The notes: generated from the sequence alone by a model not told the origin. A stretch of 64,000 bases of DNA from Octopus sinensis (GCF_006345805.1 NC_043014.1:54932001-54996000); one strand, 5' to 3'. Counted from the stretch's first letter, positions 4,585-30,800 are shown. Numbers and translations are program-made.

Positions 4585-4615
<31 letters not shown>

Positions 4616-4752: not shown

Positions 4753-4807
<55 letters not shown>

Positions 4808-4982: not shown

Positions 4983-5025
<43 letters not shown>

Positions 5026-5210: not shown

Positions 5211-5298
<88 letters not shown>

Positions 5299-5319
5299 AT
5301 ATATAATATATATATATTA
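4320..5319. repeat. ~1 kb degenerate (TA)n microsatellite
   Basis: Seen directly; source of the poly-YI ORFs. Confidence 0.98.
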
Positions 5320-9960: not shown

Positions 9961-12900
9961 TATATATGTGTGTGTGTGTACGCAAAATCATATTACTAAT
10001 GGTTAATATATTTATTACTTCTGTCAATTATCCATGCGTTAATAAGAATTTTACCAGTAACAGAATCGCAATGAACAGAACAACGATGAAGCCTTATTAG
10101 CCATTCATAGGCCAGCACATGTATAACTGTTGTAGATATCGTCTGTTGCCAGTCAGTTTAGTTATCCAGCTGACAATGCCCCTGCTACGACATTACACAA
10201 TAACAACAGACGTAAATAATTAGCTACAAACTACAAGTTGTTGAGCAAGATTTACAACATGGCTACTGGTCCAGTCGCCATGTTGCTTGGCATGTTCAGC
10301 AATAGTTTTGAGCCGCCCCAACCTAAAACGTGATTCTTGAATGAAGGAAACATCATTGTTATAGAATGCAGTAAGGTTAAATTTTTCCCAACCACTTCAA
10401 GCATTTCATTAAACGACATCATATATGGTACATTATATAGTGTTAGTGGTAGGTATTGGTTTTCGTTTTTTTCAGTCATAAGAACAACAATGCATCGTAT
10501 TGTATATAGACACGAACACATTATATGTTTTAATAATAAACACGTTCTCAGCGATGTGTTTATGATTACATATAATAAACACATTCATTGTTGTTGAGAA
10601 TTTAGGGCAATATTACGACGCATTGGTCTTGTAGTTATGAATGAAAACAAATCTAATGCCCCCAACTACGCCATTAACATGTCCTCCTTTCATGTTTTTA
10701 GACGTTATAGTGTAGCTTAAGAAAGATTTGGCTGTTATTTCTAGTAGGTCAATAGACCACGTAAAGGTTTTGTCTTCGCCGTCTTTGCCAGTTTTCATAA
10801 CGAGATGGTGGCAGTGAATCGCTTCAGTTAAAATTATGTAACTTTAAATGGTTATAATTTCTTTAATTTTTAGAAGAAAGGAATATGACTTTTACCATCA
10901 GCATGCAAAACAACATTAGAAGTGCATTTTTGAAAATATTTGGTGAAAATATGAAAAGCTTTAATAATAAAGAATTAAAATTCCCACAATTGAAAATAGG
11001 ATTGAAAATTATTGCCGCACAATCGATCGGTGTTAGAAAGACGATTTATAATATGTTGTTTCAATTGCGTTCACCGAGTTTTTCCACAGTTTGACAAGCT
11101 TCTGCAATATCAGTGACTATTTTATGCGCTGTTTCGTACGTATCGAAGACGAATTTCATTTAAGCAGACGACAATTAGGCATACGACATTCACAAGCTTC
11201 AACAAAGGCGAAAGGCGTCTGTTGTTAGGTATGACTTTGGTCATGAAGTTTGCGACCCAACTACAGTTTTCAATTCCATTGTGTAGCATTTTGTGAGTGG
11301 ATTTTGTTGACAAACTGAAAGAAGTCCGTCATATATATATATATATATATATATCATTTAATGTACACAGTATAACGGTCGGCTCTGAAGATTGCTCGGA
11401 GACACGAGGCTTGTCTTAAACACCTGCCTAACACACATGTTAAGAAACTATTTGTAGCTCCTATCTTACATATATATATTCTTTTATTTGTTTCAGTCAT
11501 TTAACTGCGGCCATGCTGGAGCAAATCGACCCAGGACTTATTCTTTATAAGCCAAGTACTTATCCTATCGGTCTTTTGCCGAACCCCTAAGTTACGGGGA
11601 CGTAAACATACCAACGTCGGTTGTCCAGCGCTGGTGGGGTGGGGGGACATAGCGGTTGTAGAGTTCTTCGAGTAAAAATCCTTTAAGGCGGTGCCCCAGC
11701 ATGGTCTCCGTCAAATGACCGAAACAAGTAAAAGAATGAAAGAATGTGATCACGTGAAAAACGCGACCGAACTTTCTTTCCAACTTAATAAATGACTTGT
11801 CCATTTCCAGTATTCGAACATTCTGCAAAGGGGTTTGAGCAAACATTGCATTGCTTGGAAACAAATAAGGGCTGGCGTCCGGAAGGGAGTTCATCCGTAG
11901 AAAATCTGTCTCAACAAACTCCGTCTGAGCCATGCAATAATGGGGGAAATTGGACGTTAAATCGATGGTTTTCTGTGTGAGTATACTTAACGGCGGACAT
12001 CTTCGGAGTTTCTGTAAACCAAATTCCTCTCACACACAACCCAATATTACTGTGGTAAAAAGGCCCAAGGAACCATATAGTGTGTTCAAAACCGAAACTG
12101 CTTTTTGGGAAACGAATTTCTTAACCCTCCGATAAAAAAAAAAAAAAACAATATTATTCTCGTTATCGTATCTTGTGTTTGAGTGTTAGGCTTTAAACAA
12201 CCTTAACTACAGAACGAACTCAAGGACAAGCAAAATCCTTAAAGTAAGGAAACAATGCCGTATATAAATATCCATGTATGAATCAAGAATAAAAGTAAAG
12301 ACTATTCTAGAACGTGGAAACTCCGTGGATCCGGTTTGTGATAATGGTTTCAAATTTTGACACAAGGCTAACAATTTCGGTGTCGAGGTAAGTCGACCCC
12401 AGTACTCAACTGGTTCTTATTTTATCGACCTTCGAATGGATGAAAGGCAAAGTCGATCTCGGCAGAAATTGAACCCCGAACTTAAAGACGGACGAAATGC
12501 CGCTAAGCACTGTGTCTGGTGTGCAAACGAGTCTGCCAGTTCGCCGTCCTGTTTCTAACAATAATTTCTCTTCGTAAAGTCTTTTAACGTCTCTCACTAG
12601 CTTATCTTGCTCATTTTATTTTATTTTCATTTACGGTGATTAGCATATTGACCCCCTAAAGAGATAGTAGGTTCGGTTCGTTTACGTTACATTTTTTTTT
12701 CTAGCTTTGACACTTGGTTGTTAGCTAAATACCAGGTTCACACCGGGGACGAAGGGAAGGGACACAAACAGACTGATTGGCTTGGTTTAAGTTAAAATAA
12801 ATAATTTCCAACAAACAGGAAGAGATATTTATCTAAAACAAGCAAGTAAATAAATAAATAACTACGAAAATAAAACGAAAAGTATATAAAACAAAACAAA

Positions 12901-13501
12901 TCAACACAGAGCCGCGCGTGGTTGACGGCGGGTGGCTGAGACCGGCAGACGAAAGCATGAAAACGTAAAGCTTGTTTGCTTGGAGTACGGCAGAGGAGAA
13001 AAGAAGCAATTAGCGTCGCCATTTTAACAAAGCCTTCCTTTACAAGGCTGGTAGGAAACAAATGTATATACATACAAATTGTTTTTATATCTACATACAT
13101 ACATATATATATGTATGTATATATATATATATATATATATATACATACATTTCCTTTGCCGGTCAACTTGTCAAACATGAAAGTTGTTTGTCGTTTTGCT
13201 TAATATTGTCACGTGACTTTAAAGTAAATTTTTAGCGGCCAAAATTATCAAGTCTATCAGTTCGGGCTTCTTTTACTCCCAGAATGAGTGTCTTCGTCGT
13301 CGTTCCTATTGTCTTCATTTTCGTTACATTGTGCCCCCCCCCAACTCCACCCTTTCGATTGTTACTACTCAGGGGACGAATCTCCTTTCAAAAAGAAAAA
13401 CAAAATCTGTAAAATGTTCTCGCATTCGTGTGTCCCACATTCGTGTGGTTTGTATATCTAAAAAAATATTTGCCATTAAAAAAACGTAGCACATCGAATT
13501 A

Positions 13502-13867
13502 TTCTTTTATTCTTGTACTTGTTTCCATCATTTGACTGCGGCCATGCTGGAGCACCGCCTTTAGTCGAGCAAATGTAGCCCAAGACTTTCTTTGTAAGCC
13601 TAGTACTTCTTCTATCGGTTCGTTTTGCCGAACCGCTAAGTTACATAAGCACCAACATCAGTTGTCAAGCGATGGTTGGGGTGGGGGACAGACATATATA
13701 TATACATCGAGCTTCTTTCAGTTTCCGTCTATCCAATCCACTCACAAGGCTTTGGTTGGCCCGAGGCTTATAGTAGAAGACACTTGCCAAGGTGCCACGC
13801 TGTAGGACTGAACCTGGAACCATGTGGTTGGGAAGCAAACTTCTACCACACAGCCACACCTGTGCCT
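13502..13867 (-). mobile_element. SINE family A
   Basis: Matches the family consensus. Confidence 0.85.
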
Positions 13868-13887
13868 TTTAACCTTGATTTGAGCCA

Positions 13888-14095
13888 GGATCTTTTCGCT
13901 TTGACCGGCAGATTTTTTAAATAATTTCTTTGTAACTAAATACTTTTAAACTTCGTATACTGGTAGAATGTGTTTATAAAACATCTTTTTCTCTTGGCTT
14001 TTTTGAGAAAATTCTGTAGTTTGTAAGCTATTTGTTCTTTAATTTCTTGCATTTTGGCAATTTCAACCAATCAATGACGTCTATTGAGGTGAATT
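13888..14095 (+). mobile_element. Partial copy of the GGATC-terminus (Merlin-like) MITE family
   Basis: Same terminus and internal sequence as the 45232 and 48359 copies. Confidence 0.65.
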
Positions 14096-14312
14096 CAATT
14101 TATCCGGATCGTTGTCAACAACAACAATTTGCGGTCAAATACCCGCTCACTTTGAACTTTCGAAGTTGAGTGGAATAAGATATCTCTTATCTGTAAAAAA
14201 GTTAAGAGTTAGGGACAGGAAGTATAATCGGCTGCAAACAATACTTCAATAACATTTTCGTCTGACCTATGGAAGCATCGATGAACGGAAGTAAAAACGA
14301 ATGAATACAATA

Positions 14313-14725
14313 ATTTGTCTTATGAAGAACGGCTGAAGACGCTCGGCCCTTATTCTCTAGAAAAACGCCGCCGCCGTGATGATCTCATTCTCGCTCACAA
14401 CATCATAAGCGGAAAGTGTAACCTCTCGAAAGAGCTATTCTTCACTCCTGCTCCAGAGCGTCGGCTGCGGGGGTCATTCCGAAAAGCTCTACCTGCGACG
14501 ATTTCATCTCAATCGAAGGAGAGGGGCTTTCTCCGTCCGGGTTGCGGATCCGTGGAATAAGCTGCCGGACGAGATAGTGAAGATGCCGACAACCGCTCGG
14601 TTCAAAGTCTCTCTTGACCACAAATGGCCTGAACTCTTTACATGAACACCACCCTGTACTTAACTCCATGTCCCCCTACATGGCCTTGTTTTTTGAGCCA
14701 AAAATTAACTAACTAACTAACTAAC
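14313..14725 (+). mobile_element. CR1-clade LINE 3' end, 5'-truncated, with (TAAC)n tail
   Basis: LSYEERLKTLGPYSLEKRRRRDDLI, then frameshifted WNKLPDEIV...FKVSLDHKW; tandem taac tail. Confidence 0.88.
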
Positions 14726-15229
14726 ATTCCTCAAAGTGGAGCGGATCTCGCTAGAAACAACGTTAGATTTAATGAAGCGACGGAACATTCCATGGTGTGG
14801 GGGAGAGGAGGAGGTTTCAGATTGGTTGGTGCTGGACCCACAACACTTCTTCCATTTGGGAGGGACTATCGTTTATGGAAACGGAAGTGGTTAACAGAAG
14901 AGGAAGAAGTCTTCAGAAATCCAGCAATGTTACCACTGATGGATAAACAGCAATAAAAAGAAAATTAAAGATTTTACAAATAAACAGGAAAAGATTTGTA
15001 TGTACATTAAATTTTATTTTATAATTAAAATCTAAAACAGATGAAAACGAAAAGAATTCTAAAATGATCATAATTGGTTAATATTCATCTTGAAAAAACA
15101 TTAAAAATGACAGTTCATTTTCTATCTCTTTTACTGTCAGTTAAATAGCTTTGAAGGTAAAAATAAAAATTGATTATCAGAAGGTAATTGTGTATGAGAA
15201 CATAATGAATATCAAAGAGAATTTTGGGA

Positions 15230-16115
15230 TTAATACAAAGCGATTTCAGTCGCTGACGTTTTCGCCATTTCTTTGGCGTGGTTGACAACATCGGGTAAGT
15301 TTGGCGATGTCGAATCCCTTGGCTGCACTTGGACGCTGTTCGACGTTCTTGAAGTCATTATTGTCGAAGTGACTGTCGTTGGAGTGGTGATACAGGTCGA
15401 CGGAAGAGCAGCCGCGGGCAAAGGCGACAAATGACCGGCATCGAACGTTGCTGTTATAAACGCTTCGTATTCAACGGTCCCCATTTTAAAATGCAGACGA
15501 TCGTGCGCTAACTTCATAATACGCCCTTGAAGAGTGCCATCGCTCAGGGTATCAATAATGGATTCTGGGATTATCGCATAGACCACAGCAGTTATATAGT
15601 CGATTGTCCATTGGCATAGATTTGCATAATCGATTAACTCGAGAATCAGGCCATTGGTGAAGTTTTCCACGCCAATGCGGTGAAGATTTTGCTCATTGAG
15701 ACTTTGTTTGCACAGACGACTCGAAAATGTGAAAATACCGGCAAAGCGGAATATTATAGAAGTTGGCGGCGGTTGAATCTTCTCGTAATCAAATGTGGAG
15801 TCTGTTTTGTCAAAGAATTCGTTCAAAAGCCGTAAATATTCCGGAGTCCCCACTGAAAGTTGAGACCTCTTTAATACCACGTCTAAAATACGATATTGAA
15901 TGTTGGCTGGTTTTATACAGACTTGAACCGAATCGGGTGCCAACTGACGAATTACTCCAACCAAATGCTCAAATGTCCATTTATTGATGTTAGAATAATC
16001 GTAAAGTTCCAATACCAGACCATTTACATACCAATGGGCTTCGATTCGTCGTAAATCTCCAGACTCCAGCTTTGCATTGCTGATGTCAGCCGATAGACAA
16101 TATAATCCAGGATAT
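15230..16115 (-). CDS. Orphan terminal coding exon: two tandem ~102-aa modules plus a Thr/Ser/Pro-rich tail; family unknown
   Basis: 294 uninterrupted codons; pyrimidine-rich acceptor tctttattctttcgttgtttctag ending at 16116; internal repeat with a 123-aa period (NGLVLELYDY/NGLILELIDY, GTPEY/GTVEY); no in-frame ATG near the 5' end. Confidence 0.75.
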
Positions 16116-16984
16116 CTAGAAACAACGAAAGAATAAAGATAGTATTAATTGACAGAAGTTAAAACATAATTATTTTATTTTTACAAATTTTATTTATTTC
16201 TCACAGCAACTGAACATTGTCTTTCGTTACAGGTTTCCAAAAGACCAACCGATTGTTTCAATGAATTTCCAACAATGAAAGTAACAAGGGCGGTACCGTA
16301 AATAATGTAGAACAAAAATAACAAAGGAATCTGTTCGCAAAGCCCAGGTTTTGCGAGGGCATTAGTGAAAGCTACACACAGACGATTCTACTGTTTCCAC
16401 CAACCAAATTTCACCCACAAAACATCGTCGATCGACCCCCAAGAATTCACTTTTCCCCTAAAATGCCGTCGAGTGCAATCAAATCGGAACTACAGTAAGT
16501 GCGAAGCTATTTAACAACAAAACCATAAAAATTCATCTCTTCTCACCACCACACCACCACCACTCTGCAACCACTTCATTTTTCCTCAGCGGACACTATT
16601 GATCGATCTATTGAAATACACTAATCGAAAATGGCAGATTGAGCTTGCCTGTTGTATATAATAATCCAGAAACCTGAAATACAAGAAGTTGGAATATAAA
16701 AAAAAAACAAAAAAAACTGATTCAACCGCAAAACTTTCATTTATTTGATAGAAACGGAAATGCTCCAATGTAACAGATTCACGGTCGTTGGTAAAAACAC
16801 TTCTAAACACGAACTAATGAGAAAGTATCCAGGTAGGTTTTAGTCTTCTGTTATAAATTCTGTTTACATCTAGTCTGTATTACAGGGTTATTAAATCGAC
16901 TCGAGTACTTCTTGCCTGGTAGTTTATTTTCCGTCCTCTGAAGAATGAAAATCAAAGTGACCTCGATTTGTTTCGACCCTTTGG

Positions 16985-17043
16985 AATTTCAGTTCTAAAG
17001 GGTGGTCGAAACAAACCCGAGCAACGCCGGGCGATACTGCTAG
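16985..17043 (+). mobile_element. Helitron-like 3' end fragment
   Basis: cccgagcaacgccggg hairpin followed by CTAG|T; same as the end of the 42300 element. Confidence 0.6.
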
Positions 17044-17549
17044 TTTATTGTTCAAAACGTTTTCAGTCAAACGTTTGTTCCATTTGACTCTTCGCATTTT
17101 TGATTTTCGTCTTTTTTTTTCCTTTTTTTTTTTTGAAGAAAGAGTTTAATTAAAGATGGATCTGCGCATGCGTACACACGTGTGTTGTTTTGACATTACA
17201 TTGTAGATGTAGTGTCCCTTGATCTTCTGTGAATCCATATGGCCATTCGGAAATATCCCGTATTGGAAACAAGGGAGGGTTGAGTACAGGAAGGACATCA
17301 GACCGTGAAAAACCTACCCCAACAAATCTCGAGTGTCCCACGCAAGCATGGAAAAAGTGGACGCTGAAGCGATGATAACGACCGTACGAATTCCTCTTCA
17401 ATCTTCGTCACGAATGAAGAATCGACATTGACGCTATCTCTGCTTCTAGTAAAACTATTGCATTAGAATAATCTATGTTAACATAATCTTCCGATGCAGA
17501 AGGTTACCTGGGTAATTCTAAGCAAATATAATAGAACGAATCATTCAAC

Positions 17550-17604
<55 letters not shown>

Positions 17605-18137
17605 TGACAGATGGACCGAAAACAAAAGAGAGAGAAAGAGAAAAATGTAGAAAAGATTTATATTATAATCCTTTTGTCTCCATTGTATCTCGCAGAAATG
17701 AATTCCTAGCTAGCGGCGATAGCTGTGACCTATTCGATGTTAAGCTATAAAATTTATCTTCACAACAGTAGTCAGCCATCTTTAAAACTTATATAAAAGT
17801 TTCAAATGAATTGAATAACTTGAATAGAAATTGAGGCGTTCCTCCATTCACTGCTTCTATCTACAATTGGTTTTCTTTTAGTCTGTCTTCGAAGATATTT
17901 CACGTAAGTCTTTACATTAATTTCGAGAAGCAGAAGCTTCAATATCAGTAACTTTGTTGTCACAAAAAAAAGTTGCATCTATGTGTGTACCAAACGGGCA
18001 AAAAAAAAAAAAAACAACAACAAAAAACAGGGGTAATTTTTGATATTTATTTTCTCATTAACTCAGGATGAAAACTATAATTGTTAGCCTCTCGCACAAT
18101 GAAATTTACAATCCCATTATCGAAATGTGCCCTAAAT

Positions 18138-18531
18138 TACTCTTACTTGTTTCAGTCATTTGACTGTGGCCATGCTGGAGCACCGCCTTTAGTCGAGCAA
18201 ATCGACCCCGGGACTTATTCTTTGTAAGCCCAGTACTTATTCTATCGGTCTCTTTTGCCGAACCGCTAAGTAACGGGGGACGTTAACACACCAGCATCGG
18301 TTGTCAAGCAATGCTAGGGGGACAAACACAGACACACAAACACACACACATACATACACATATATACGATAGGCTTCTTTCAGTTTCCGTCTACCAAATC
18401 CACTCACAAGGCATTGGTCGGCCCGGGGCTATAGCAGAAGACACTTGCCCAAGGTGCCACGCAGTGGGACTGAACCCGGAACCATGTGGTTGTTTAGCGA
18501 GCTACTTACCACACAGCCACTCCTGCGCCTA
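18138..18531 (-). mobile_element. SINE family A, near full length
   Basis: Matches the family consensus. Confidence 0.9.
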
Positions 18532-19814
18532 TTCACTTTCCTCTGCATTCAGAGTGAGCATAAAATCATTTACGATTCCCGCACTGTTGTTGTCAAACCA
18601 ATGTACAAATTGAGAAAAATCGGTTCCCTTTTCCCATCTAAAGCTAGATGAAACATTCTTCTGTGCTATCCAAACCATCATCATCATCTACCTCATCTGA
18701 CGAAGAAAAATCAGAAAAAAACTTTGCTGTACAAATCGTCCATTTGCAACTGGGTTTCTCCTGTCAATAAGGGTTTAGGGCGGTGAGCTAGCAGCATTGT
18801 CAGCACAACGGACAAAATGCTTAGTGACATTTCATCCGGCTTTATTAAGTTCTGGGCTAAAATTCCGCCGAGGTTGACTTTGTCTCTTATCTTTTCGCGG
18901 GTCGATAAAATAAGTACCAGCTGCATATCGGAGTCGATGTAATCGATTGCCAGGCGCCCCACCCCTCAAAAATTTCCGGAGTTTAGCCAATAATAGGTCA
19001 AAATATCTTCCACTGGCTTTGTCTCTCTGAAATCGTCCGGAATAAGAGATTCCTCGCTTGAAAGCACAGATAACGAACGACAGCAAAAACAAAATAATAC
19101 TCTCGATTACATATTCATCTAACCCATGCTACCATTGAAAACGAACGAAAAGTGAAATTGTTAATAGGAATATTAAAGTGGTTGATGAAGTTCGGATAAA
19201 AAGAAGAAAAGGTCTGCTCTTAGAATGCTTCCCTTGACTTTTGCAACCACGGATCATCGTGGCCAAAGCCATGCAATGTTCACCTGTCCCATCGCCATCA
19301 CTACTATTTCTGCTAAACCCTACACAGTGCCTTCTTAAAGCATAGACACACACTTGGGTTGTGTCTCCACAACCCCAGTGTGTCTATGCTATCGTTACGT
19401 AGGGGCTCCGGTGCATTGTTTGAGGTGGTGGTGGTGGGTTAGACGATATCGTAAAGAGGCTCCTAGTGCTGTATTAACTCTTGTTGTTGCCAATGAGTAA
19501 ATCGTATATATCATCATCATTTTAACGTCCACTTTTCCAAGCTTTCATGGGTCGGACGGAATTGATCGAGGCAGATTTTCTCGGACCGGACGCCCTTTTT
19601 GTCGTATATAATTCAATTTACAAGATAATCAAACTTTTGAAAAAATTTAGTCAGATATCTGTAAATTTATTGTTACATACGATGCCGGGACAGACGAATT
19701 ATAATCTCGTACTTATGATTAGATTTTGATGATGTTTTAGAATTAAAAAATAAGACTACATTAGAACGGGTTGTCTTAGAAGGGTTAGTATTAAAAAAAA
19801 AATCTATCGCTTCC

Positions 19815-20080
19815 TCAAATCCTTTTCAGACGTTCACTCTTATTAACTGACAGACGATCCAGCTTAACCAACTACAATGGCCTCTACAAAGGATATGGGC
19901 CCTGACGTTCTACTTCAGACTAATAAAAAGAAAATGTCATTGAAGTAGATGCTTTATCTCATCTTTTACCATTGAGATAACTATACAAACCCAGTCGTAT
20001 TTACCGACGAAGATAATGCCATCGAGAAATACATAAATCAGGATCACATTCGGAGAGGCGAAGCGACACCAGCATCGACA
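19815..20080 (+). mobile_element. Highly degenerate Gypsy-type pol (RNase H) remnant
   Basis: Broken reads RRSLLLTD, QRIWALT, KENVIEVDALS occur in the order of Gypsy RRFTLLTDH / QRWAL / NVVADALS. Confidence 0.45.
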
Positions 20081-21061
20081 GATGGGCGTCAATGGCTGAT
20101 GTCTATATTTAGTTCGTAACGCTCACACTCCATTCTAATTTGCTGGTGTCACAATGACTGCTGAAGCTGAAATTATTATTTTGGAAAGGAATTTCAAACA
20201 TAACAAGCTCAATGATTTATTTTTTAAATATGCTAATTATTCACGCCCACTCCTGGTGCAATTCTGTACATATCCTTATTGATTTTCTCAGCATTACTTC
20301 GGCAAATAAAATTAAGCGTATGCTTAACTAAGGCTTAAAGGCCTCCAATTGTCAACTTCGCCGAAATGATTAACTATAAACTCTTTTTATCCCCAACTTG
20401 TGTTTACTTATTAGATTTTTGATGATCATAAAACACTCAACTATTGTGGGTTTTTTTCTTCTTATATATATATATATATTATATATACACAGGCGGTTTC
20501 CACGAGTAATTGAACGGACCACACAAAAGATTCGAGAAATTTCGTTTTATTTTCCTTTTGCAAAAAGGCTGCAGTACTAATTATTGTTAGAACAATTTCC
20601 AACGAAAACCAAATCTGTGTAGAAATAGCTGCCAAACGCCCGTCAACTCATCACACTCTAATATCTTAAAAGCGAAGAGAAATATATTGAATAAATGTTT
20701 GTCTAGCTGTACAAAAAGACGACACATTGTATTGAAAGCCAGAAAGCTTTCATCACTGGTCTCTTCAATGAAGACTGAATTGGGGGGGGGGGGAGTTACG
20801 CAACAGATGAAATAAAAGGTTCTTCACCATTTCAAGAATTCGTATCGCCAAAAAATTTCCCCATTTAATTAATGCTTTACCCACTTCGCCAGACCTTCGG
20901 GGACATCGCTATTATCGATCCTGTTAGGGGGACGGAATGATTTCAATATTAATGCCGATGGATTGTATTTTGTCGCTGAACCAAAGAAACTCAACGGAAA
21001 CATGGGCGATGAGGGACGACTTAGGTGCAACAGGACTCGGCTGCTTCTCATTTTCAGTTGG

Positions 21062-21497
21062 TACTACTTGAGAACAGGGATCTTTTCCTTTTGATGGACG
21101 GAATTTTCTACTTAACTAAACAATTTGAAACTTCGTATACTGGTAGAATGTGTCAAAAGAAAACATTATTGTAAACAACGTTAAACTTAAAAATTACAAT
21201 TTTGTTTTCAATTTTGTTTACAATAATGTTTTCTTTTGACACATTCTACCAGTATACGAAGTTTCAAATTGTTTAATTAACTAGAAAATTCCGTCCATCA
21301 AAAGGAAAAGATCCGAGAACAGTAGTCTCGGTGCGCGCACTCGCGTACCCGCGCTAGCTAGTCATGACTAGTCGATCCTTACTTTGTGTTTATTTACTTT
21401 GCTAGGTAGTCGTTGTAGGGTCGACTAGTCATGACTAGCTAGCACGGATGCGCGAGTACGCGAGTGCGCGCACCGGGACCACTGTTCTCAAGTAGTA
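21062..21497. mobile_element. TA-flanked MITE (Tc1/mariner-like) with a second MITE inserted in its left TIR
   Basis: TIR ctacttgagaacag(tagtctcggtgcgcgcactcgcgtac) / gtacgcgagtgcgcgcaccgggaccactgttctcaagtag. Confidence 0.8.
21078..21314. mobile_element. 237-bp MITE with ~100-bp TIRs, GG termini and 8-bp TSD (Merlin-like)
   Basis: gagaacag duplicated at 21070-21077 and 21315-21322. Confidence 0.8.
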
Positions 21498-22270
21498 ACC
21501 TTTCAGTTTAACCCGAGTAACGTGAAATGATGCATCGCGCCGCCTCGCCCGCGACTTGAACTTGCGCCGTGACTGGCCAAACGGCTTAACCACTAAGCGA
21601 CGCGCGTGCGTGCATTGATTGCTAACGTAAAAAAACATCAAAATTATAAAAAAAAAAGAACAAGATTGACGTGCTATCCATCGAAGGTCATCAAATCCTT
21701 TCACATTGCAAAGGGTTTTAATAGCCGTCCTTTCTCCCACACCTTTGACGCTACCTGCCCACAAATTGAAACAAACAACTTCACTGCCCTATCACTTCCT
21801 GGTCATCAACACTACATCCTTTCACGCGAGCCCTCTTTCTCTCTCCCTCTCTGTCTCTCTCTTGCTGATCGTGACAACAACAACCTCGCCAATGGGGGCT
21901 ATCAGCTCGTCTCCCGGGTCGGGTGCAGAGCAGGTCACCTTGACCACTTGACCCTTTCAGACAATCCCTTCGCTCAGAGGGAGGTATGTCAACAACTCCT
22001 AACTAGCCAGCTGTGGTGTTGGTCTTCTTTACAATCAAGGAAAAGAATGCGAAAACATCTTCAGCGTGCGGCACACATACATATACACACATACACATAC
22101 ACACACACACGCACACAAGGTGGTCGGAGATAGTGCTAAATTCAAAATAGTATCAAACAATAAGTTCGACAAGTAAACAACATGAACTGAAGGGTGGACC
22201 CCGATGTGGTCACTCGACCTGCAAGAAAGTAGTAGCAAAAAAAAATCGCCCTCCAAATTAAACTTTGAAT

Positions 22271-22655
22271 AGGCGCAGGAGTGGCTGTGTGGTAAGTAGC
22301 TTGCTAACCAACCACATGGTTCCGGGTTCAGTCCCACTGCGTGACATCTTGGGCGAGTGTCTTCTGCTATAGCCCCGGGCCGACCAATGCCTTGTGAGTG
22401 GATTTGGTAGACGGAAACTGAAAGAAGCCTGTCATGTATGTTTGTGTTGTGTTTGTGTGTCTGTATTTGTCGTCCTAGCATTGCTTGACAACCGATGCTG
22501 GTGTGTTTACATCCCCGTTACTTAGCGGTTCGGCAAAAAGAGACCGATAGAATAAGTACTGGGCTTACAAAAAGAATAAGTCCCGGGGTCGATTTGCTCG
22601 ACTAAAGGCGGTGCTCCAGCATGGCCACAGTCACGTGACTGAAACAAGTAAAAAA
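22271..22655 (+). mobile_element. SINE family A
   Basis: Matches the family consensus. Confidence 0.9.
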
Positions 22656-24177
22656 AAAAATTTAATTAAATTAAAATTAAAGCACCAATCCAAAACGACA
22701 AAATACGCGGCAAGTCTCTTTTCTTACAACATCGGACCGACCAATGAATTTGGTTGAGGAAACTGTGCGGAAGCCTGCCGTGTGTGTATGTATGTGGCTA
22801 TGAGGGCCCTGTCGAGTAAAGAGACCGCTAGAATAATAAGTATCAGGCTTTAAAAAAAGAACTGGGATCGATTCATTCGACAAAAAAAATCCAAGGTGGT
22901 GCCCCAGCATGGCCGCAGTCTGAAAGAATATATTCATTTATTCATTTCAGTCATTTGACCGCGGCCATGCTGGAGCACCGCCTTTACGCGAGCAAATCGA
23001 GCCCAGGACTTATACTTTCTAAACCTAGTACTTATTCTATCGGTGTCTTATGCCGAACCGTTAAGTTACGGGGATATAAACACACTAGCATCGGTTGTCA
23101 AACTATGTTGGGGGACAAACACAACAGGCTTCCTTCAGTTTCTGTCTACCAAATCCACTCAAAGTTTTGATCGTCCCGAGGCTAAACGACACTTGCCCAA
23201 GGTGCCACGCAGTGGGACTGAACCCGAAACCATGTGGTTGGTAATGAGGATGCTTACCACAGTCACTCCTGTGCGTGTATGTATATACATATGTATATAT
23301 ATTCTTTTGTTTGATTCATTTGATTGCGGCCATACTGGAGTACCATCTTTAGTCGAACAAATTGACACCGTGATTTATTCTTTGTCAATCCAATACTTAT
23401 TTTATCAGTCTATTTTGCCGAACCGTTAGGTTACGGGCACGTAAACAAACCAGCATCGGTTGTCAAGTGATGGTGGGGAACAAAACACAGACATGCAAAT
23501 ACACACACACACAAACAAACAGGTGCGTCCGTCCGTCCGCGTGACTCCGCCGTTTGCCAACGGCGCTCTTTCCTTGACGTTCCAGTTATATCAGCTGTTC
23601 AGGAAAGGAGACAGAATACGTAGCAAGTCTTACAATCCCTAAGCACTTCGACTAAACCAGTGGTCCTCAACCGGGGTCCACACGGCCCTTGGGCGTGGGT
23701 GGGGGTCCACACAAGATTTTGTCATCAAAATTGCTTAAATTACTACAATACGGAAAGGGGGGGGGCTAAGCATCGGATGGCTAGGAGGGTCCAGTCGAGT
23801 AAAACAGAAATCAGGAGTCCACAGGCAGAGAATGGTTGACAATTGCTGGGCTTAAACTTTTCAAGGCGGTGCTCCAGCATGACCGTAGTCCAATGACTGA
23901 AGCAAGCACGTTGAACAGTCTGCATAGATTCAGATATACACTGTCTGCAATGCCTTTGATAATATCGATCAGAGCTAATCTAGAAGCTAAGGATTATTTC
24001 ATGAGAATTAATCAATCAAAATTAAACAAAAGGTGGATTAAATTAGAGAATTATCGATAAAAGGTCATCGATAAAAGGTCATCGATAAATCGATTTCCGG
24101 AATATATTCTAGAAATATATTTTAAGATTTTCCCCTTTAGATTTACACAATCCAAGTTTTATGACAGCCGTAGCCAT

Positions 24178-24555
24178 AGGCGCAGGAGTGGCTGTGTGGT
24201 AAGTAGCTTGCTTTCCAACTTCATGGTTCCGGGTTCATTCCCACTGTGTGGCACCTTGGGCAAGTGTCTTCTACTATAGCCTCGTACCGACCAAAGCCTT
24301 GTGTGTGGATTTGGTAGACGGAAACTGAAGGAAGCACGTTGTATACATGTATATATGTTTGTGTGTCTGTGTTTGTCCCCCTACCATCGCTTGACAACTA
24401 ATGGTGGTGTGTTTACGTCCCCGTAAACTAGCGGTTCGGCAAAAGAGACCGATAAAGTATTAGGCTTACAAAGTCCTGGGGTCGATTTGCTCGAAAGGCG
24501 GTGCTCCAGCATGGCCGCAGTCAAATGACTGAAACAAGTAAAGGAGTAAAAGAAG
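24178..24555 (+). mobile_element. SINE family A
   Basis: Matches the family consensus. Confidence 0.88.
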
Positions 24556-25089
24556 AGAGTATGTGGTTAGGATGTTTGCTGTGAAAGCACAGCATCTCAG
24601 GTTCTGTTCCACAGCATGGCACCTCCCTCGTGAATGAATTTGGCAGATGGAAACTGCCTGGAAGCCCTTTATATGTATGTGCCTTGGTGTTTGTATTTGT
24701 CTTCCCACCACTCGACAACTAGTGTTGGTTTGTTTACGTTCCCATAGCTTAGCTGTCCGACAAAAGAGGCTGATGGAATGGTTTCGATTTGTTTGATGAA
24801 AACCCTTCAATCTTGTGCCCCAGCATGGCCGCAGTCCAGAGACTGAAAGGAGGTAAAATATCATTCCAACCGTGCCCATCACCTCGTGTTTCAAGAGGAT
24901 ATCTACGTCCCGGACTACGTTGGCTAATGTGGTCTTTCGTACTGATGTTGATGGGATGGGATTTGAGAGATGGCATTCTTTCGATATAACTCGACAAAAT
25001 CAAAACATTTCACTTCGGGTATTTCCGTGGAAGCAAATGACAGTTCGATTCTGTTTTCTGCTTGGAAATTTGCGGATTTTACATATACA

Positions 25090-25480
25090 CAGGAGTGGCT
25101 GTGTGGTAAGTAGCTTGTTTACCAGCCACATGGTTCTGGGTTCAGTCCCACTGCGTGGCACCTTGGGCAAGTGTCTTCTGCTATAGCCTCGGGCCGACCA
25201 AAGCCTTGTGAGTGGATTTGGTAGACGGAAACTTAAAGAAACCTGTCGTATATATGTATATATGTGTGTTTGTGTGTCTGTGTTTGTCCCCCTAGCATTG
25301 CTTGACAACCGATGCTGGTGTGTTTATGTCCCCGTCACTTAGCGGTTCGGCAAAAAGAGACCGATAGAATAAGTATTGGGCTTACAAAGAATAAGTCCCG
25401 GGGTCGAGTTGCTCGATTAAATCGGTGCTCCAGCATGGCCGCAGTCAAATGACTGAAACAAGTAAAAGAGAAAAGAGAGA
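25090..25480 (+). mobile_element. SINE family A
   Basis: Matches the family consensus. Confidence 0.9.
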
Positions 25481-27628
25481 GACACCTGAAACAGGTAAGA
25501 ACAAATATGCAAGGCTCTTTTTTTCTTCAAGTTTAAAATGAGACATTGCTGGCATAATTTCGTTATATCTATATTCCACAACCCAGGGAAATACCCAAAG
25601 TGAAATGATTCGACCTTGTCGAGCTATATCGAAGGAATGCTTGAGAGATATTTGGCTGCTGTTTATAACAGGTTGGACCACTCGAGTAGAGCAGTGTTTA
25701 TTTACCTGTTGACTATATCCCATTCCCAGGCGTTAGGAAGGGCATCCAGCCGCAGAAACATTGCCAGATCAGACTGGGTCTGGTGCAGCCTTCTGGCTTC
25801 CCAGATCCCAGTTGAACCGTCCAACCCATGCTAACATGGAAAACGGATGCTAAATGAGGATGATGATGTTAAGTAACCGATTCACCTCGATCCACTCACG
25901 ACATTATATTATCCACGGAAATCGATCTTCCTATAAAATCAAAGAAACTGCGTCTCCATTGGTTTTTCAAAATCATTGCTATTAGCTCTCGGTTGTCCCT
26001 GATAAAAGTGTCAGTTTTTCAGGGAAGGGGTCGGGGATTTGAACTCAGAATGTACAGAACCAGAACACATGTCACAAGGCGTCCCGTCCGACGCTCCAGT
26101 ACTTTCGACAATCCGCAACCACTATCTTCATTTAATGTTTGTCTTCCAAACAAGTATGGATTAGGCGTTTGATAGGAGCTGACAAACCAGGGAACTGCAT
26201 CAAGCTCCGCTGTTTTGGCATAGTTTTTACGGCTGAATTCTCTTTCTAACGCTAATCACTTTACAAAGAGAACAGAGTGATCTTTACATGGCACTAGCAC
26301 CGGCAAGGTCTGTTTTCGCATGGCTTTAACGGCTGGATGCCCTTCCAAAAGGCACTAGTGACGGCGAGGTTTCATCATTATTAAACGTCCGCTCTCCATT
26401 GAGGACGGTTTAACAGGGAACCAGCGAGCTGCAGGGCTGTGCCGAGCCCAAATGTCACCCTTGGCATGGTCTCTATGCGTCGATGCCCTTTTTAACGCCA
26501 ATCATTTTACAGAGGGCAGTGGCTGCTTCTTTTCGTGCCACAGCTGTCAAACGAACAACCAGTCGGCTACTAAATAGTTTATTACGTAATTTTAGCAGCA
26601 TTATATTAACATTTACAACTTTAACATTGTCATTAAGTAAAAGTTTCATTAAAAAATATGTATTTAACAAAAGTGCAGTCGGGGACATTTTATTCCCAAT
26701 TTTTTCAACATCATTGTAATCTATACACCATCTAAAATAATGTATCTAAAATATTTCATTTAAAAGAATGTATTTTTAAGAAAGTTACGATGAAACAAAA
26801 TCTGTATGTCCAATTTTTCATCCTAGAGACAATTTCCCCCACTGGAATCCAAAATTTACTCACGGAGGGCTGAAATTTCTTCCATGCTAAGAATCGCGGC
26901 CGTAGGGTCAGTACCGTATGAACCTATGGGTACACCTAACAGTTTACTCGCCTCCTCGGACCCATCAGGCAACCAATTGCCAATCGGTAATTACAATGGT
27001 TATATATATATATATATATATATAAGTGACCCCAGTGTACCGCTATGCAACGTTCCTTCTAGATTTTTCTTGCGGGTGTGCGTAGAAATAAGCTTATGTT
27101 CAAATTTTGCCTTTCTTTACAAAGTAAGTACCCATCCATTCAAGTAACCAGTCAAACGCCTTATCAACAATCTACACAAATACGCACAATTTTTAAGTGT
27201 GAATCATTTACGATTTTATGAAATTATATAACTTCTCCAATAAAAAAAAAAAAAATTTGGTGTGTGGTTCTGTGGTAAGAAGCTTGCTTTTCAACCACAT
27301 GGTTCCGGGTTCAGTCCCACTGTTTGGCACCTCGGGCGAGTGTCTTCTGCAATAGCCTCGGGCCGACCAGAGCCTTGTGAGAGAATTTGGTAGACAGAAA
27401 GTGAAAGAAACCCGTTGTATGTGCGTGTGTGTGTGTGTCTCCGCCCCCCCCCCCCTTGTCAACCAGTGTTGGTGTTTACGTTCCGGTAACTCAGCGCTTA
27501 GAATAAGTATCAAGCTTAAAATATAAAAAAAAAATTCCTGGGGTCCCTTTAATGATTGAAGCAAATGAAAGATAACATCGAGGCAAATAGCGTCACAAAC
27601 ATGGTGAAGTCCTAGACATACTCTAAAT

Positions 27629-27854
27629 CAGCGATGGCCAACCTGAGGCCGAGGGCCGCATGATACTTTCTTGAAATGGGTTTATTTAAACATTAAAAAA
27701 AAAATTTATCAAAGATTAAATATTGTAATGAAAAATAAAAAAAGAAAGATACCCCTTTCAAGTCTGTCAGCAGTGCATAAAGTATATAAGTGACCCTCAA
27801 GAAATTTTCTTTGATTAAAATGGCCCGCAATGTAATTCGAGTTGGCCAGGCCTG
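27629..27854. mobile_element. hAT (Charlie-like) MITE
   Basis: TIR cagcgatggccaac / gttggccaggcctg; degenerate 8-bp TSD ctctaaat / ttctgaat. Confidence 0.65.
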
Positions 27855-30800
27855 TTCTGAATAAACGGTGAAAACTAGAACACCTTTAATAGCTAATGGA
27901 ATATACATGATATAATAGAGCCCTCTCAAAAAAAAAAAAAGGATTGTTACAGCTGGAGCATCTTTAATCACGGGTCTATGGAATTAAGGATCAACTTAGC
28001 TAAACACCAGCACAAACATTCTCAAATTGACTTAACTGTCCTTACCAGTGGGCACCAAAATAACTATGATATCTCCAACCCAATTAGGCAACCCAAATTA
28101 TTGATTGTTAATGGCACGTGGCAAAGTCGTCAGAGCCTTCGAATAGCGTTTTACAATCTTTGTTCCTGTTCTTTTGCATTTCGAGTTCAAATCCTGCTAT
28201 GGCCCGGTTTAGCCTCGCCTGGCACATGTACCTTTAGCAGTCCTAGCCTGTTGCAAACATTCGGGCAAGACTTCTAGCCAATGAGGTCAAGACAGGTCAC
28301 TTACACAGTTAGAAATAACAGCTAATTTTCCTGAATTCATACAATAATGCGAGGGTTATGGAATTTACTCTCCTGACGTAATCTTTCACAATGTCCCGAC
28401 AGTTTTTGCGTACCCAGTGTGAAAGATCTGGAATAAAATGGTCGGATACCTTAAAACAGACGATAGTTTTTCTAAAATTCATCAACAGAATCGTAATTTA
28501 CCTCAATGGAGATATATTTCTACAAAATTTCATTAAAATAAATGTTTTTTTCAAAGAATAATGACGACAGAATATCATACGTGAGTGGGGTGGACCAAGC
28601 AGTAGTACCTGTCAAGTACTGGTACTTTATTTGCATATATAATTGACTGTTCCCTCTTAAAATATTTTTAACGAGATGAATTAGCTTAGCTTTTTCAAAC
28701 AATTAACTCCATTTCTAGGCCCCAGTCACATATTTTCCATTGACAGAATTTCACATTTGCTTTCGGTTCTAATCATTGCCGAAAACATTTGTTCACGATA
28801 ACCTGGGGATGGGATCAGCTAAAAGTTTCCTATAAACTTTATCTTTAAGCCCACGAGTTTTTTGTTGGTTGTGAATATTTCAAACTTCCAGTATATTTAC
28901 AAACTTCGCGCTCCCTGCAATTTCCCTTCCGTACGTCTACGGCTACGCGTGTCGCGGTTTCAAGAATCTCCCGGTCTTATGGCTCTAACTAATAGGGAAA
29001 CATTGGAAAACATAGTTCTCAACATCCCCTCCTCCCTACGAAAAGAAAACACGACAGTCCAGGCAGGCCTACCTCCGGGTTTAAACAATTAAAATAAGAG
29101 TTTTGCATGAAAGACAAGTCTCAGATTAAGAAAGAAAAAAAAACTTCATGCTATATTATCACAAGCGAATATATTTTTAAGAAAAACATTTTGGGCTGTT
29201 TACCCCGTTATTTGCGTAAGACCTGAAAACTAATACATCCATTTGTAATTTAATTATTTTTTCTACTCTAATTTGCTACATAATTAATTTTTTTACAACA
29301 ATCTCTTGCGGTTTCATTAAAAGAGCTGCTTGTAATATATTCCTCATATCCTCAATAAAACAACTTCAAACAATTCATAGACACCGAATGAACAGAAGTT
29401 ACAGCACCAGAATAACACATAAGATTCCCATTAATGGAATTTTAGGATTCGTTAATGTTGAAGTTAAACACGAGAGCAGGGAAACCTTTTTTTTATCATT
29501 TCAAACGTTTCCAAAGTTTGGTGAGATGGCAGAATTGTGGGGAAAATACCTTCTGGCATTTTTTCCAGCTCTCTCTGAGTTTAAATCCCTCCGAAGTCGA
29601 TAGAATAAAGTACAACTCAAGAACTAGTGCTGGTAGTATCGTCTAATCTACACTCTTCAGAAATTAGAACAGCTGGAACAATTGAGATTGTCCCGAATGA
29701 ATTACTGGTATTTACATTATCAACTTCAGAGTTTGACTCTGCTAAGGTGTGAAGTTTGGAGTCATGTTGTGTAAAAAGACGAAATAAAATACAGCTAATT
29801 AATGAAAGGTGATCAGTGAAACCCCCCCGCCCAAATTTTTTTTTAAATGGCTCAAATAAACTACAAAACAAATATAGTGAACAAAGCATTTTATCACCTG
29901 ACTGACATTTTCTCATAACTTTCCAATTCCCCAGCAATTAAGAATTTGCCACAACTGACAAGCAAAAATAAACGTTATTCCTTTTGTGAGTTTAACGAAA
30001 CAACATTACGACAGAAATGGTGATTGTAAAATGCTTGACTTAAAAATTATTGGTACTCGAAGAACAAACAAATACAGCTAAATTAAAGCATCAATCGAGG
30101 AATATAAAGACCTTACCTCGTATGAAGAGCCATGATAATTGTTCCCGAAGCGATGTCACTTTTTATTTCGTTGTAATTTTATTTTCCCTTTTTTTTTTGT
30201 TTTGGTATGTTTATATTATTCTGGTCGGAGTAATTTCAGCAATATGTCCAAATAGAGGGGAGGGGCACGGTTGGCCTGAATGCAACGATGTTATTGTTAC
30301 CTGTTGCAGTTGGAGTTGAAACCCAAAAAGGAGAGATTATTCTTTGTAAGTGGTGTGAGAGGGGGGAAGGGTTATTAAAGTAAAGGAGGGACGGCTTCAC
30401 TATTGACCACTGAATGGACGGACGACAAGGTGGGGGGGAAAGGGTTTTTTTTTTTTTTTTTTTTGTAACCAAACTGGGCTTAAAGAAGGAAGGACGATGC
30501 AGATTTAGTCAGTTCTGTCCTGATGTACCGGGGTAAGTATGTTTCGCAGTTGCTGAGGTGGAGGAGGAGTCAGCCTCTTCACATTGTTTGGTCTTCCTTT
30601 TCTTTTTATGATTGTCGTTATTTTCCCTTTTTTCTTCTCTTTCTTTTTTTTATATATTTTAAGACCACACTCCTGATAAACTTTAAATCTATTTATACAC
30701 CCTCTCTCTCTCTCTCTCTCCACACACACACACATACACACATAGATATACACGTACACAGGTGAAATGGTCTCAGACGTCGAATCTGTCACCTTTTTTT

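What the first reader, a model, noticed from the sequence alone, without database searches (positions are those of the whole stretch)
15230..16115. Orphan 294-codon exon built from an unrecognised, tandemly duplicated ~102-aa domain
Seen: the frame extends 34 codons upstream of the tracked ORF to a strong splice acceptor ending at 16116. The translation has two modules that align without gaps at a 123-aa period. Module 1 runs YPGLYCLSAD...LRRIEAHWYVNGLVLELYDYSNINKWT...QYRI...GTPEY...FD; module 2 runs FAGIFTFSSR...LHRIGVENFTNGLILELIDYANLCQWT...QGRI...GTVEY...FD. I count 29/102 identities, followed by a Thr/Ser/Pro-rich tail. Inference: an old duplication with no stops or frameshifts, in a region where most TE-derived frames are broken, implies purifying selection on a real protein. 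Module 1 starts exactly at the acceptor and there is no nearby in-frame ATG, so upstream exons, possibly with more modules, should exist. I cannot assign a family; a lineage-specific gene or a domesticated transposon N-terminal domain are both open.
Basis: partly seen in the sequence, partly recalled or inferred. Interest (0 to 1): 0.82.

Follow-up and report, generated by a model that had tools for sequence, protein, structure and literature searches.

The report
Octopod-only gene with duplicated helical domain
The exon is real: it carries almost the whole coding sequence of an annotated but uncharacterised octopus gene, found only in octopuses and the argonaut, whose protein is two ancient copies of a helical ~105-residue domain with no detectable relative and which is kept under strong purifying selection.

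Summary
Window 15230..16115 (-) is a 294-codon stop-free exon behind a conserved AG acceptor. Its two halves match without gaps at a 123-residue offset: 30/102 identities, reached by 0 of 20,000 shuffles, BLASTP E 3e-21.

The window is Octopus sinensis. The exon is the second and last coding exon of RefSeq LOC118767068 (XP_036366982.1, 300 aa, "uncharacterized protein"). The first coding exon lies 14 kb upstream at 30133..30117 (-). It adds only Met-Ala-Leu-His-Thr plus two bases, so there are no further modules.

Orthologues with the same two-exon structure exist in O. bimaculoides, O. vulgaris and Argonauta hians (55% identity). In Argonauta the gene also lies downstream of HPF1.

dN/dS is 0.05 between Octopus species (35 synonymous against 7 non-synonymous changes).

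No relative turned up in an exhaustive phmmer scan of 1.84 billion proteins, in word-seeded searches of a 5.8-billion-protein collection, or in Pfam or PDB sequences. Foldseek on a moderately confident six-helix model also found nothing. I found no sign of a transposon.

This is a real, single-copy, octopod-restricted orphan gene. Function is untested. My best guess is a soluble intracellular binding or adaptor protein. Interest is moderate to low.

The parts
15230..16115 (-). Second and last coding exon of LOC118767068: 1 base completing codon 6, then 294 codons, then TAA (15232..15230)
   Evidence: Joined to 30133..30117 it translates exactly to P0001 / XP_036366982.1. There are no indels across three Octopus species, while the flanks carry indels.
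16116..16135 (-). 3' splice site: polypyrimidine tract plus AG (TATTCTTTCGTTGTTTCTAG)
   Evidence: Identical in O. sinensis, O. bimaculoides and O. vulgaris. Argonauta has T14CAG at the homologous codon position and phase.
15809..16114 (-). Module 1 core (exon residues 1-102; YPGLYCLSAD ... NEFFD)
   Evidence: The AF2 model from the 8-row module alignment has pLDDT 72, pTM 0.70 and six helices.
15746..15808 (-). Inter-module linker with the conserved IQPPPTS motif
   Evidence: I119-S125 of the protein are invariant between Octopus and Argonauta. pLDDT is low in the model.
15440..15745 (-). Module 2 core (exon residues 124-225; FAGIFTFSSR ... TATFD)
   Evidence: It is 58% identical to Argonauta module 2 and 25-29% identical to the module-1 copies.
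15233..15439 (-). Ser/Thr/Pro-rich, probably disordered tail ending in a short predicted helix
   Evidence: Residues 234-277 are 55% S+T+P. pLDDT is below 40, with a helix at exon residues 273-293 in the single-sequence model. The tail is not conserved in Argonauta. Within Octopus its dN/dS is 0.125.
30117..30133 (-). Coding part of the first exon: ATG GCT CTT CAT ACG AG, followed by donor GTAAG at 30116..30112
   Evidence: It is the only match to the back-translated pattern in the window, with 0 expected by chance. It is conserved in three Octopus species. An in-frame TAA lies 16 codons upstream of the ATG.
16116..30116 (-). Intron of 14,001 nt, GT-AG, falling after the second base of codon 6
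   Evidence: Orthologous introns are 8,432 nt (O. bimaculoides), 13,669 nt (O. vulgaris) and 2,208 nt (Argonauta). The intron is filled with SINE/LINE-like repeats.
15013..15018 (-). Candidate polyadenylation signal AATAAA, 212 nt after the stop codon
   Evidence: It is conserved in all three Octopus species. Collinear homology with O. bimaculoides breaks about 50 nt further on, at 14963. Its use as a signal is inferred, not shown.

Best explanation
**What it is (shown).** Window 15230..16115 (-) is the 3'-terminal exon of a real, single-copy protein-coding gene, Octopus sinensis LOC118767068. It carries 294 of the gene's 300 codons. The gene has two coding exons separated by a 14-kb intron.

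The product has no signal-peptide-like or membrane-spanning segment. Its layout is:
- two paralogous ~105-residue all-helical modules;
- a conserved proline-containing linker (IQPPPTS) between them;
- a fast-evolving Ser/Thr/Pro-rich, probably disordered tail.

The internal duplication predates the Octopus-Argonauta split. Both copies have stayed intact and constrained since then. With the collections available here, the family is detectable only in incirrate octopods.

**How it works (inferred).** I think it is most likely a soluble intracellular, non-enzymatic binding or adaptor protein. In this reading the two helical modules pack as an intramolecular pseudo-dimer. The residues invariant in all copies (N31-G32, E36, D39, W46, R75, R83, E92-Y93 in module numbering) would hold the fold or form a repeated binding surface. 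The PPP linker and the S/T-rich tail would offer docking or phosphorylation sites.

The confidence below applies to the gene and architecture statement. For the mechanism my confidence is only about 0.25.
For: - **Identity of the gene.** A phmmer scan of 1.84e9 representative proteins returns a 300-aa protein that is 100% identical over all 294 residues. It is named XP_036366982.1, uncharacterized protein LOC118767068 [Octopus sinensis]. The window is identical to CM016876.1 across the gene, and exon 1 joined to exon 2 translates exactly to that protein.
- **Orthologues.** The same 17-nt-plus-rest, GT-AG structure is found in O. bimaculoides, O. vulgaris and Argonauta hians.
- **Constraint.** Between O. 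sinensis and O. bimaculoides there are 35 synonymous and 7 non-synonymous differences, giving dN/dS 0.053 (binomial p = 2e-16). Over the modules alone dN/dS is 0.022. There are no indels in 883 nt, while the flanks have indels. The frame is intact in Argonauta, where synonymous sites are saturated.
- **Duplication.** M1-M1 identity is 50% and M2-M2 is 58% across genera, against 25-29% between M1 and M2. The duplication is therefore older than the split.
- **Synteny.** Pfam-confirmed HPF1 exons lie upstream on the same strand in both the window and Argonauta.
- **Fold.** AF2 on the module alignment gives pLDDT 72 and pTM 0.70, with the core at 86-88 and six helices.
- **Soluble and non-basic.** The modules have pI 4.4-6.6 and the N-terminus MALHTRYPGLY is not hydrophobic.
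Against: - No expression or splice-junction data could be examined. Exon 1 rests on computational gene models, which may not be independent of each other.
- Exon 1 is no better conserved than the surrounding non-coding DNA, and its peptide differs in Argonauta (MFVYQ against MALHT).
- Absence outside Octopoda may reflect missing annotated cephalopod proteomes or rapid divergence: identity is already down to 55% within Octopoda.
- The functional proposal has no direct support. The model comes from only four distinct sequences, and the packing of the two modules was not modelled with confidence (full-length single-sequence model, pLDDT 44).
- Conserved Glu/Asp/Arg/Tyr residues could equally mark a catalytic site.
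Confidence: 0.85

Rival explanations
1. Domesticated transposon or retroelement gene. In this reading the two helical modules derive from a TE-encoded protein, for example a two-lobed Gag capsid as in Arc, or a transposase N-terminal DNA-binding domain. The gene would have captured a short 5' exon and a promoter.
For: - Nearly the whole CDS sits in one exon behind a tiny recruited-looking first exon. That layout is common for retrocopies and domesticated TE genes (established knowledge).
- The gene sits in TE-rich DNA.
- The two best-probability PDB Foldseek hits include the human Arc C-lobe and the MLV capsid N-terminal domain, but only at E 5.4-5.8, probability 0.06-0.11 and TM 0.27-0.44.
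Against: - Pfam shows no Gag, transposase or integrase match at E <= 10.
- The Foldseek scores are at chance level.
- There are no TIRs within 13500-18000.
- There is no second copy in the window or in the 10-kb flanks of three other genomes.
- No paralogue exists among annotated proteins of three Octopus genomes, which do contain TE-derived models.
- The modules are acidic, which argues against nucleic-acid binding.
- The two modules are 27% identical to each other, unlike capsid lobes.
Confidence: 0.08
2. A fast-diverged member of an old, widespread family, so that the missing homologues reflect detection failure rather than lineage-specific origin. Orthologues would then exist in decapodiform cephalopods or other molluscs but fall below sequence and fold detection, or are simply not annotated.
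For: - Octopus and Argonauta share only 50-58% identity in the modules, whereas the last exon of neighbouring HPF1 is 82% identical. The gene therefore evolves fast.
- Only four proteins were found in total, which suggests few annotated cephalopod proteomes are in the collections.
- The AF2 model rests on four distinct sequences, so a fold match could have been missed.
Against: - Exhaustive phmmer over 1.84e9 representatives found nothing else at E <= 0.001.
- Two profile searches, whose candidates were limited to proteins sharing 5-residue words and to 0.55-1.75 times the query length, found nothing else at E <= 10.
- A profile search of PDB sequences found nothing better than E 0.53.
- Foldseek found nothing better than E 2.2.
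Confidence: 0.25
3. Not a functional protein-coding gene: a chance or decaying ORF that annotation pipelines picked up.
For: No transcript evidence could be examined here, and the first exon is minimal.
Against: - It is a 294-codon open frame in 39% GC DNA and the longest ORF in the window.
- dN/dS is 0.05 with p = 2e-16, and the exon has no indels.
- Both modules are intact in Argonauta, where dS is saturated.
- The splice phase and the AATAAA signal are conserved.
Confidence: 0.02
4. An alternative 3' exon of the upstream HPF1 gene, or a diverged tandem duplicate of HPF1.
For: It lies on the same strand immediately downstream of HPF1 in both Octopus and Argonauta. HPF1 is also helical (established knowledge).
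Against: - The HPF1 exon at 54483-54803 reaches the end of the Pfam model (positions 170-251 of 251), so HPF1 is complete without this exon.
- The target protein has no HPF1 Pfam match at E <= 10.
- No HPF1 structure appears among the Foldseek hits.
- All four annotations give the gene its own ATG exon.
Confidence: 0.03

Closest known systems
Taxonomically restricted (orphan) genes of cephalopods, as reported in the octopus genome papers (own knowledge: Albertin et al. 2015 described hundreds of cephalopod-specific genes)
   Same: It has no detectable homologue outside a narrow clade, is annotated only as 'uncharacterized protein', and is a compact gene set among repeats.
   Different: Here the coding constraint is measured directly (dN/dS 0.05). 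The gene has conserved synteny and splice phase across genera. The protein has an internal ancient duplication of a folded ~105-residue module, rather than being short or disordered as many orphans are.
Tandem helical-domain proteins such as tandem death-effector domains (caspase-8, FLIP) or tandem calponin-homology actin-binding domains
   Same: The architecture is similar: two consecutive ~100-residue all-helical modules of common origin in one chain. In those families the modules pack against each other and act by protein binding. This is the analogy behind my mechanistic guess.
   Different: There is no sequence match to DED, CH or any death-fold Pfam model. No such structure appears among the Foldseek hits. 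This is an analogy only, not membership.
Domesticated Gag capsid genes (Arc, PNMA, RTL families)
   Same: These are also helical two-lobed proteins encoded largely by one exon. Arc C-lobe and MLV capsid appear among the (insignificant) Foldseek hits.
   Different: There is no Pfam Gag match. Foldseek probability is at most 0.11 and TM at most 0.44. The two lobes here are recognisable sequence paralogues (27% identity). No retroelement relatives were found.

Membership tests
Taxonomically restricted, functional protein-coding gene | No homologue outside the clade in sequence searches | tested here: met
   Only Octopus (3 species) and Argonauta hians were found. An exhaustive phmmer scan of 1.84e9 representatives gave nothing else. 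Word-seeded, length-limited searches of 5.8e9 proteins with a single sequence and two profiles gave nothing else. Limit: unannotated cephalopod genomes could not be searched.
Taxonomically restricted, functional protein-coding gene | Purifying selection on the reading frame | tested here: met
   dN/dS is 0.053-0.061. There are 35 synonymous against 7 non-synonymous differences (p = 2e-16) and no indels.
Taxonomically restricted, functional protein-coding gene | Orthologous position (synteny) and gene structure conserved | tested here: met
   HPF1 lies upstream on the same strand in Octopus and Argonauta. The intron position and phase are identical in four species.
Taxonomically restricted, functional protein-coding gene | Transcribed and spliced as modelled | not testable with these tools
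   No RNA-seq or transcript collection for Octopus was available. No paper mentions the locus.
Active or recently active transposable element | Multiple dispersed near-identical copies | tested here: not met
   There is one copy per locus in the window and in three other genomes' loci, and one protein cluster per genus among annotated proteins. Whole-genome tblastn was not possible.
Active or recently active transposable element | Terminal inverted repeats or LTRs flanking the ORF | tested here: not met
   No inverted repeat of at least 18 nt was found in 13500-18000. The only direct repeat there is a single 22-nt pair at 82% identity, with no LTR-like pair.
Active or recently active transposable element | Transposase, RT, integrase or Gag domain | tested here: not met
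   Pfam gave 0 families at E <= 10 for the exon. The separate modules gave only chance-level hits, all with E >= 0.099.
Gag capsid-like (Arc/retroviral CA) fold | Significant structural or profile similarity to CA lobes | tested here: not met
   Foldseek against PDB: Arc C-lobe E 5.4, probability 0.11, TM 0.34/0.44; MLV CA NTD E 5.8, probability 0.06. BFVD: a foamy-virus Gag at E 6.3, probability 0.02. The model is only moderately confident, so a very remote relation is not excluded.
Death-fold (DED/DD/CARD) or calponin-homology tandem domains | Pfam or fold match to the family | tested here: not met
   There are no Pfam hits and none among the Foldseek PDB hits at E <= 10.
HPF1 family (neighbouring gene) | Match to Pfam PF10228 | tested here: not met
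   The neighbouring exons match at E 1e-27 and 1e-17. The target has no match at E <= 10.

The most novel reading that the evidence does not exclude
The ~105-residue module is a truly new protein fold born in the octopod lineage, either de novo or by divergence beyond recognition. It then duplicated in tandem before the Octopus-Argonauta split and was fixed under strong constraint. That would give a datable, structurally tractable example of new-domain birth followed by internal duplication in an animal.
Probability: 0.2. Interest if true: 0.6.

Novelty: new member of a known kind. Interest (0 to 1): 0.35.

Why it matters
Lineage-restricted genes are a large and mostly unexplored share of cephalopod genomes, and they are often doubted as annotation noise. 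This one can be shown from sequence alone to be a constrained gene with conserved synteny that encodes a folded protein, and its domain matches nothing in Pfam, PDB or billions of proteins. That makes it a clean candidate for defining a new domain family and for asking what octopod-specific biology it serves. On its own it does not overturn anything: the gene is already annotated as uncharacterised, and orphan genes are expected in this clade.

Tried and rejected
**Family and homologue searches**
- Pfam on the exon gave 0 hits. On the eight modules it gave only AP_endonuc_2 at E 0.099, DdMyo7_FERM at 0.18, DUF3007 at 0.14 and Trans_coact at 0.15. All are far below the curated cut-offs and I treat them as chance.
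- PDB sequence search gave nothing for the single sequence. The module profile gave best E-values of 0.53 and 0.65, which I reject.
- NCBIfam gave nothing. In PHROGs, phrog_14790 (unknown function) scored E 0.0023 and 19 bits against Octopus module 2 only. It did not match Argonauta or module 1, so I treat it as chance.
- Profile searches of 5.8e9 proteins with the module alignment and the full-length alignment found nothing new.

**Structure**
- Single-sequence AF2 of the whole exon was unusable, with pLDDT 44.
- Foldseek on the module model gave a best E of 5.1 against PDB and 2.2 against BFVD. No match.

**More modules, transposon signs and other checks**
- The module profile was run against all six-frame pieces of the window and three loci. 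Beyond the exon itself, the only hit was a weak one at 10396..10223 (-), with E 0.28 in the window and 0.011 in O. vulgaris. It does not extend into neighbouring frames. It also differs at about 10 of 50 residues between O. sinensis and O. bimaculoides, which is neutral-like. I reject it as an exon; a relic is not excluded.
- A TIR and repeat search around the exon found nothing relevant.
- Rfam on the window gave no hits.
- A literature search for the locus identifiers found 0 papers.
- I looked for a divergence date for Argonauta and Octopus in PMC9635652, but the text gives none, so I quote no date.

Full report

Yes. On the minus strand, window 16114..15233 translates to 294 codons without a stop, followed by TAA at 15232..15230. 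Just upstream lies TATTCTTTCGTTGTTTCTAG, with the AG at 16117-16116. Base 16115 completes a split codon. It is the longest ORF in the 64-kb window; the other long ones are microsatellite or SINE translations.

The two halves are paralogous:
- The ungapped match at offset 123 has 30/102 identities. Shuffles gave a mean of 6.1 and a maximum of 17 over 20,000 trials, and the next best offset has 12.
- BLASTP of the halves gives 68.9 bits, E 3e-21, 27% identity.
- The stretch after module 2 is 55% Ser+Thr+Pro.

**2. What gene is it?**

An exhaustive phmmer scan of 1.84 billion representative proteins returned exactly two proteins:
- P0001, 300 aa, 100% identical over all 294 residues.
- P0002, 257 aa, 55% identical.

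Cluster look-up names them:
- XP_036366982.1, "uncharacterized protein LOC118767068 [Octopus sinensis]".
- Near-identical members XP_052831169.1 (O. bimaculoides) and CAI9738004.1 (O. vulgaris).
- GAB1603203.1, "hypothetical protein" of Argonauta hians.

The window is identical to O. sinensis chromosome record CM016876.1 across the gene.

P0001 has six residues, MALHTR, ahead of the exon. The back-translated pattern followed by GT occurs once in the window, at 30133..30115 (-), with none expected by chance. Joining 30133..30117 to 16115..15230 gives 903 nt that translate exactly to P0001.

So the CDS has two exons, 17 nt plus 886 nt, split by a 14,001-nt GT-AG intron. An in-frame TAA lies 16 codons upstream of the ATG.

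The same 17-nt-plus-rest structure reproduces the annotated protein in three other species:

| Species | Intron length |
|---|---|
| O. bimaculoides | 8,432 nt |
| O. vulgaris | 13,669 nt |
| A. hians | 2,208 nt |

In Argonauta the acceptor sits at the same codon position and phase (T14CAG|T TAC ACG GGA). The first-exon peptide differs there (MFVYQ).

A canonical AATAAA lies 212 nt after the stop, at 15018..15013 (-). It is conserved in the three Octopus species. Collinear homology with O. bimaculoides ends about 50 nt further on.

**3. Is it a constrained gene?**

Yes. Nei-Gojobori counts on the exon:

| Comparison | Synonymous | Non-synonymous | dS | dN | dN/dS |
|---|---|---|---|---|---|
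| O. sinensis vs O. bimaculoides | 35 | 7 | 0.196 | 0.010 | 0.053 |
| O. sinensis vs O. vulgaris | 10 | 2 | 0.051 | 0.003 | 0.058 |

- For sinensis against bimaculoides, the modules alone give 0.022 and the tail 0.125.
- With 77% of sites non-synonymous, 7 of 42 changes being non-synonymous has a one-sided binomial p of 2e-16.
- The exon has no gap column in 883 nt across three species. The adjacent intron has 37 gap columns in 850 nt and the 3' flank has 7 in 267 nt.
- In Argonauta both modules are intact although synonymous sites are saturated, with dN 0.35.

Module identities across genera are 50% (M1-M1) and 58% (M2-M2), against 25-29% between M1 and M2. The duplication therefore predates the Octopus-Argonauta split.

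Seventeen positions are invariant in all eight module copies: G3, S8, L16, L21, N31, G32, L33, L35, E36, D39, W46, P60, R75, R83, E92, Y93 and F101. The inter-module IQPPPTS..F...GIFTFSS stretch is the longest invariant run between genera.

**4. Context**

Upstream on the same strand the window carries exons of HPF1. These lie at 57541-57416, 56110-55913 and 54803-54483, and the last two match Pfam PF10228 at E 1e-17 and 1e-27. In Argonauta the gene called just upstream is also HPF1 (zf-CCHH plus HPF1). Synteny is therefore conserved.

HPF1 is complete without our exon, because its last exon reaches the end of the Pfam model. Our protein has no HPF1 match. No other gene is called within 10 kb of the gene in any of the four genomes.

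The intron and flanks are full of SINE-like and LINE-like pieces and microsatellites.

**5. Is it a transposon or a known domain?**

I found no evidence that it is either.
- Pfam: 0 families at E <= 10 for the exon, and only chance-level hits for the modules.
- PDB sequences: nothing for the single sequence, and a best E of 0.53 for the profile.
- NCBIfam: nothing. PHROGs: one 19-bit hit to an unknown-function family, in Octopus module 2 only.
- Profile searches of 5.8 billion proteins with the module alignment and the full-length alignment: nothing new.
- No second copy in the window or in the other loci by tblastn or by profile against six-frame pieces.
- No TIRs around the exon.

One weak profile hit lies 4.8 kb downstream, at 10396..10223 (-). 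It does not extend into neighbouring frames and evolves neutrally. I regard it as chance or at most a relic.

**6. Structure**

The single-sequence AF2 model of the exon was poor (pLDDT 44, all helical). Module 1 modelled with the eight-row module alignment gave pLDDT 72.3 and pTM 0.70. The core at residues 30-100 scored 86-88. The model has six helices and disordered ends.

Foldseek found nothing significant:
- Against PDB the best E was 5.1 and TM was at most 0.44. The human Arc C-lobe and the MLV capsid NTD are in the list, but at probability of 0.11 or less.
- Against BFVD the best E was 2.2.

The fold is therefore either new or not modelled well enough to be recognised. With four distinct sequences in the alignment I cannot tell which.

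**7. How it most likely works**

Shown:
- It is a 300-residue protein without a hydrophobic N-terminus.
- It has two acidic-to-neutral helical modules, with pI 5.6 and 4.9 in Octopus and 6.6 and 4.4 in Argonauta.
- It has a conserved proline linker and a variable S/T/P-rich tail.

Inferred:
- It is a soluble intracellular, non-enzymatic binding or adaptor protein.
- The two paralogous modules pack as a pseudo-dimer, as other tandem helical domains do.
- The invariant polar residues either stabilise the fold or form a repeated binding surface.
- The linker and tail act as docking or phosphorylation sites.
- Nucleic-acid binding is less likely because the modules are acidic. Secretion is less likely because the annotated N-terminus lacks a signal peptide.

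I put this mechanism at about 0.25. The statement about the gene and its architecture I put at about 0.85-0.9.

**8. Comparison with the known, and novelty**

The gene is already annotated in four species, but only as uncharacterised or hypothetical. No paper in the library mentions the locus. It belongs to the well-known class of taxonomically restricted cephalopod genes.

What is new is the demonstration of three things: its internal ancient duplication, its strong constraint, and its lack of any sequence or fold relative. The corrections are that the upstream exon adds no modules and that the gene is not unannotated.

Interest is moderate to low. It is a good candidate for a new domain family, but it is an expected kind of object and it comes with no functional lead.

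**9. Limits**
- There are no transcript data.
- Whole-genome searches of cephalopod assemblies were not possible.
- The three Octopus gene models may share evidence with each other.
- The structural model rests on a shallow alignment.

Noticed in passing
window 54483-54803, 55913-56110, 57416-57541 (-): These are exons of HPF1 (histone PARylation factor 1). The first two match Pfam PF10228 at E 1e-27 and 1e-17, and the last exon is 82% identical in protein to Argonauta. HPF1 lies upstream of the target gene on the same strand in both Octopus and Argonauta.
   Followed up: partly
window 60240-60695 (-): A 151-codon ORF with an acidic Asp/Ser/Lys-rich stretch ([23 protein letters not shown]...). 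It has no Pfam match. It may be an N-terminal exon of HPF1 or of another gene.
   Followed up: partly
window 10223-10396 (-): A 58-codon stop-free piece with a weak match (8.9-13.4 bits) to the core of the module profile. It is present at the orthologous site in O. vulgaris and O. bimaculoides. It does not extend into neighbouring frames and shows about 20% amino-acid divergence between species. It is chance or a decayed relic.
   Followed up: yes
window 14315-14560 (+) and 40835-41245 (+): ORF fragments that look like LINE reverse-transcriptase remnants (for example ...YEERLKTLGPYSLEKRRRRDDLI...). This is judged from my own knowledge of such C-terminal LINE motifs. The first lies about 700 nt beyond the gene's stop, near where homology with O. 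bimaculoides breaks.
   Followed up: no
window 13676-13924, 18311-18613, 22035-22481, 24466-24894, 27208-27564, 36567-36908 and others: Many copies, on both strands, of one short interspersed repeat. Its translations recur as ...[38 protein letters not shown].... Copies are 70-90% alike between loci and species. It is presumably an octopus SINE.
   Followed up: no
window 54922-55163: A tandem array of 11 copies of a 22-nt unit (TTTTATTCGAGAGTCACTACAG) at 96% match. It sits inside the HPF1 intron between the last two exons.
   Followed up: no
window 4323-5317 and 49366-49789; also 475-933: Long microsatellites: (TA)n of about 1 kb, giving GC 0.17 in that kilobase; (AT)n of 0.4 kb; and (TCTA)117.
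   Followed up: no
P0001 residues 141-192 (window about 15558-15713, -): A PHROG family of unknown function, phrog_14790, matches Octopus module 2 at E 0.0023 and 19 bits. It does not match the Argonauta orthologue or module 1. I treat it as chance.
   Followed up: partly
window 16116-16965 (-): The last 850 nt of the intron are 92.8% identical between O. sinensis and O. bimaculoides, and the last 60 nt are 98%. More distant intron blocks are 84-88% identical. Synonymous divergence in the exon (dS 0.196) is higher than the mismatch rate of this intron stretch. This may point to conserved intronic regulatory or splicing sequence.
   Followed up: no
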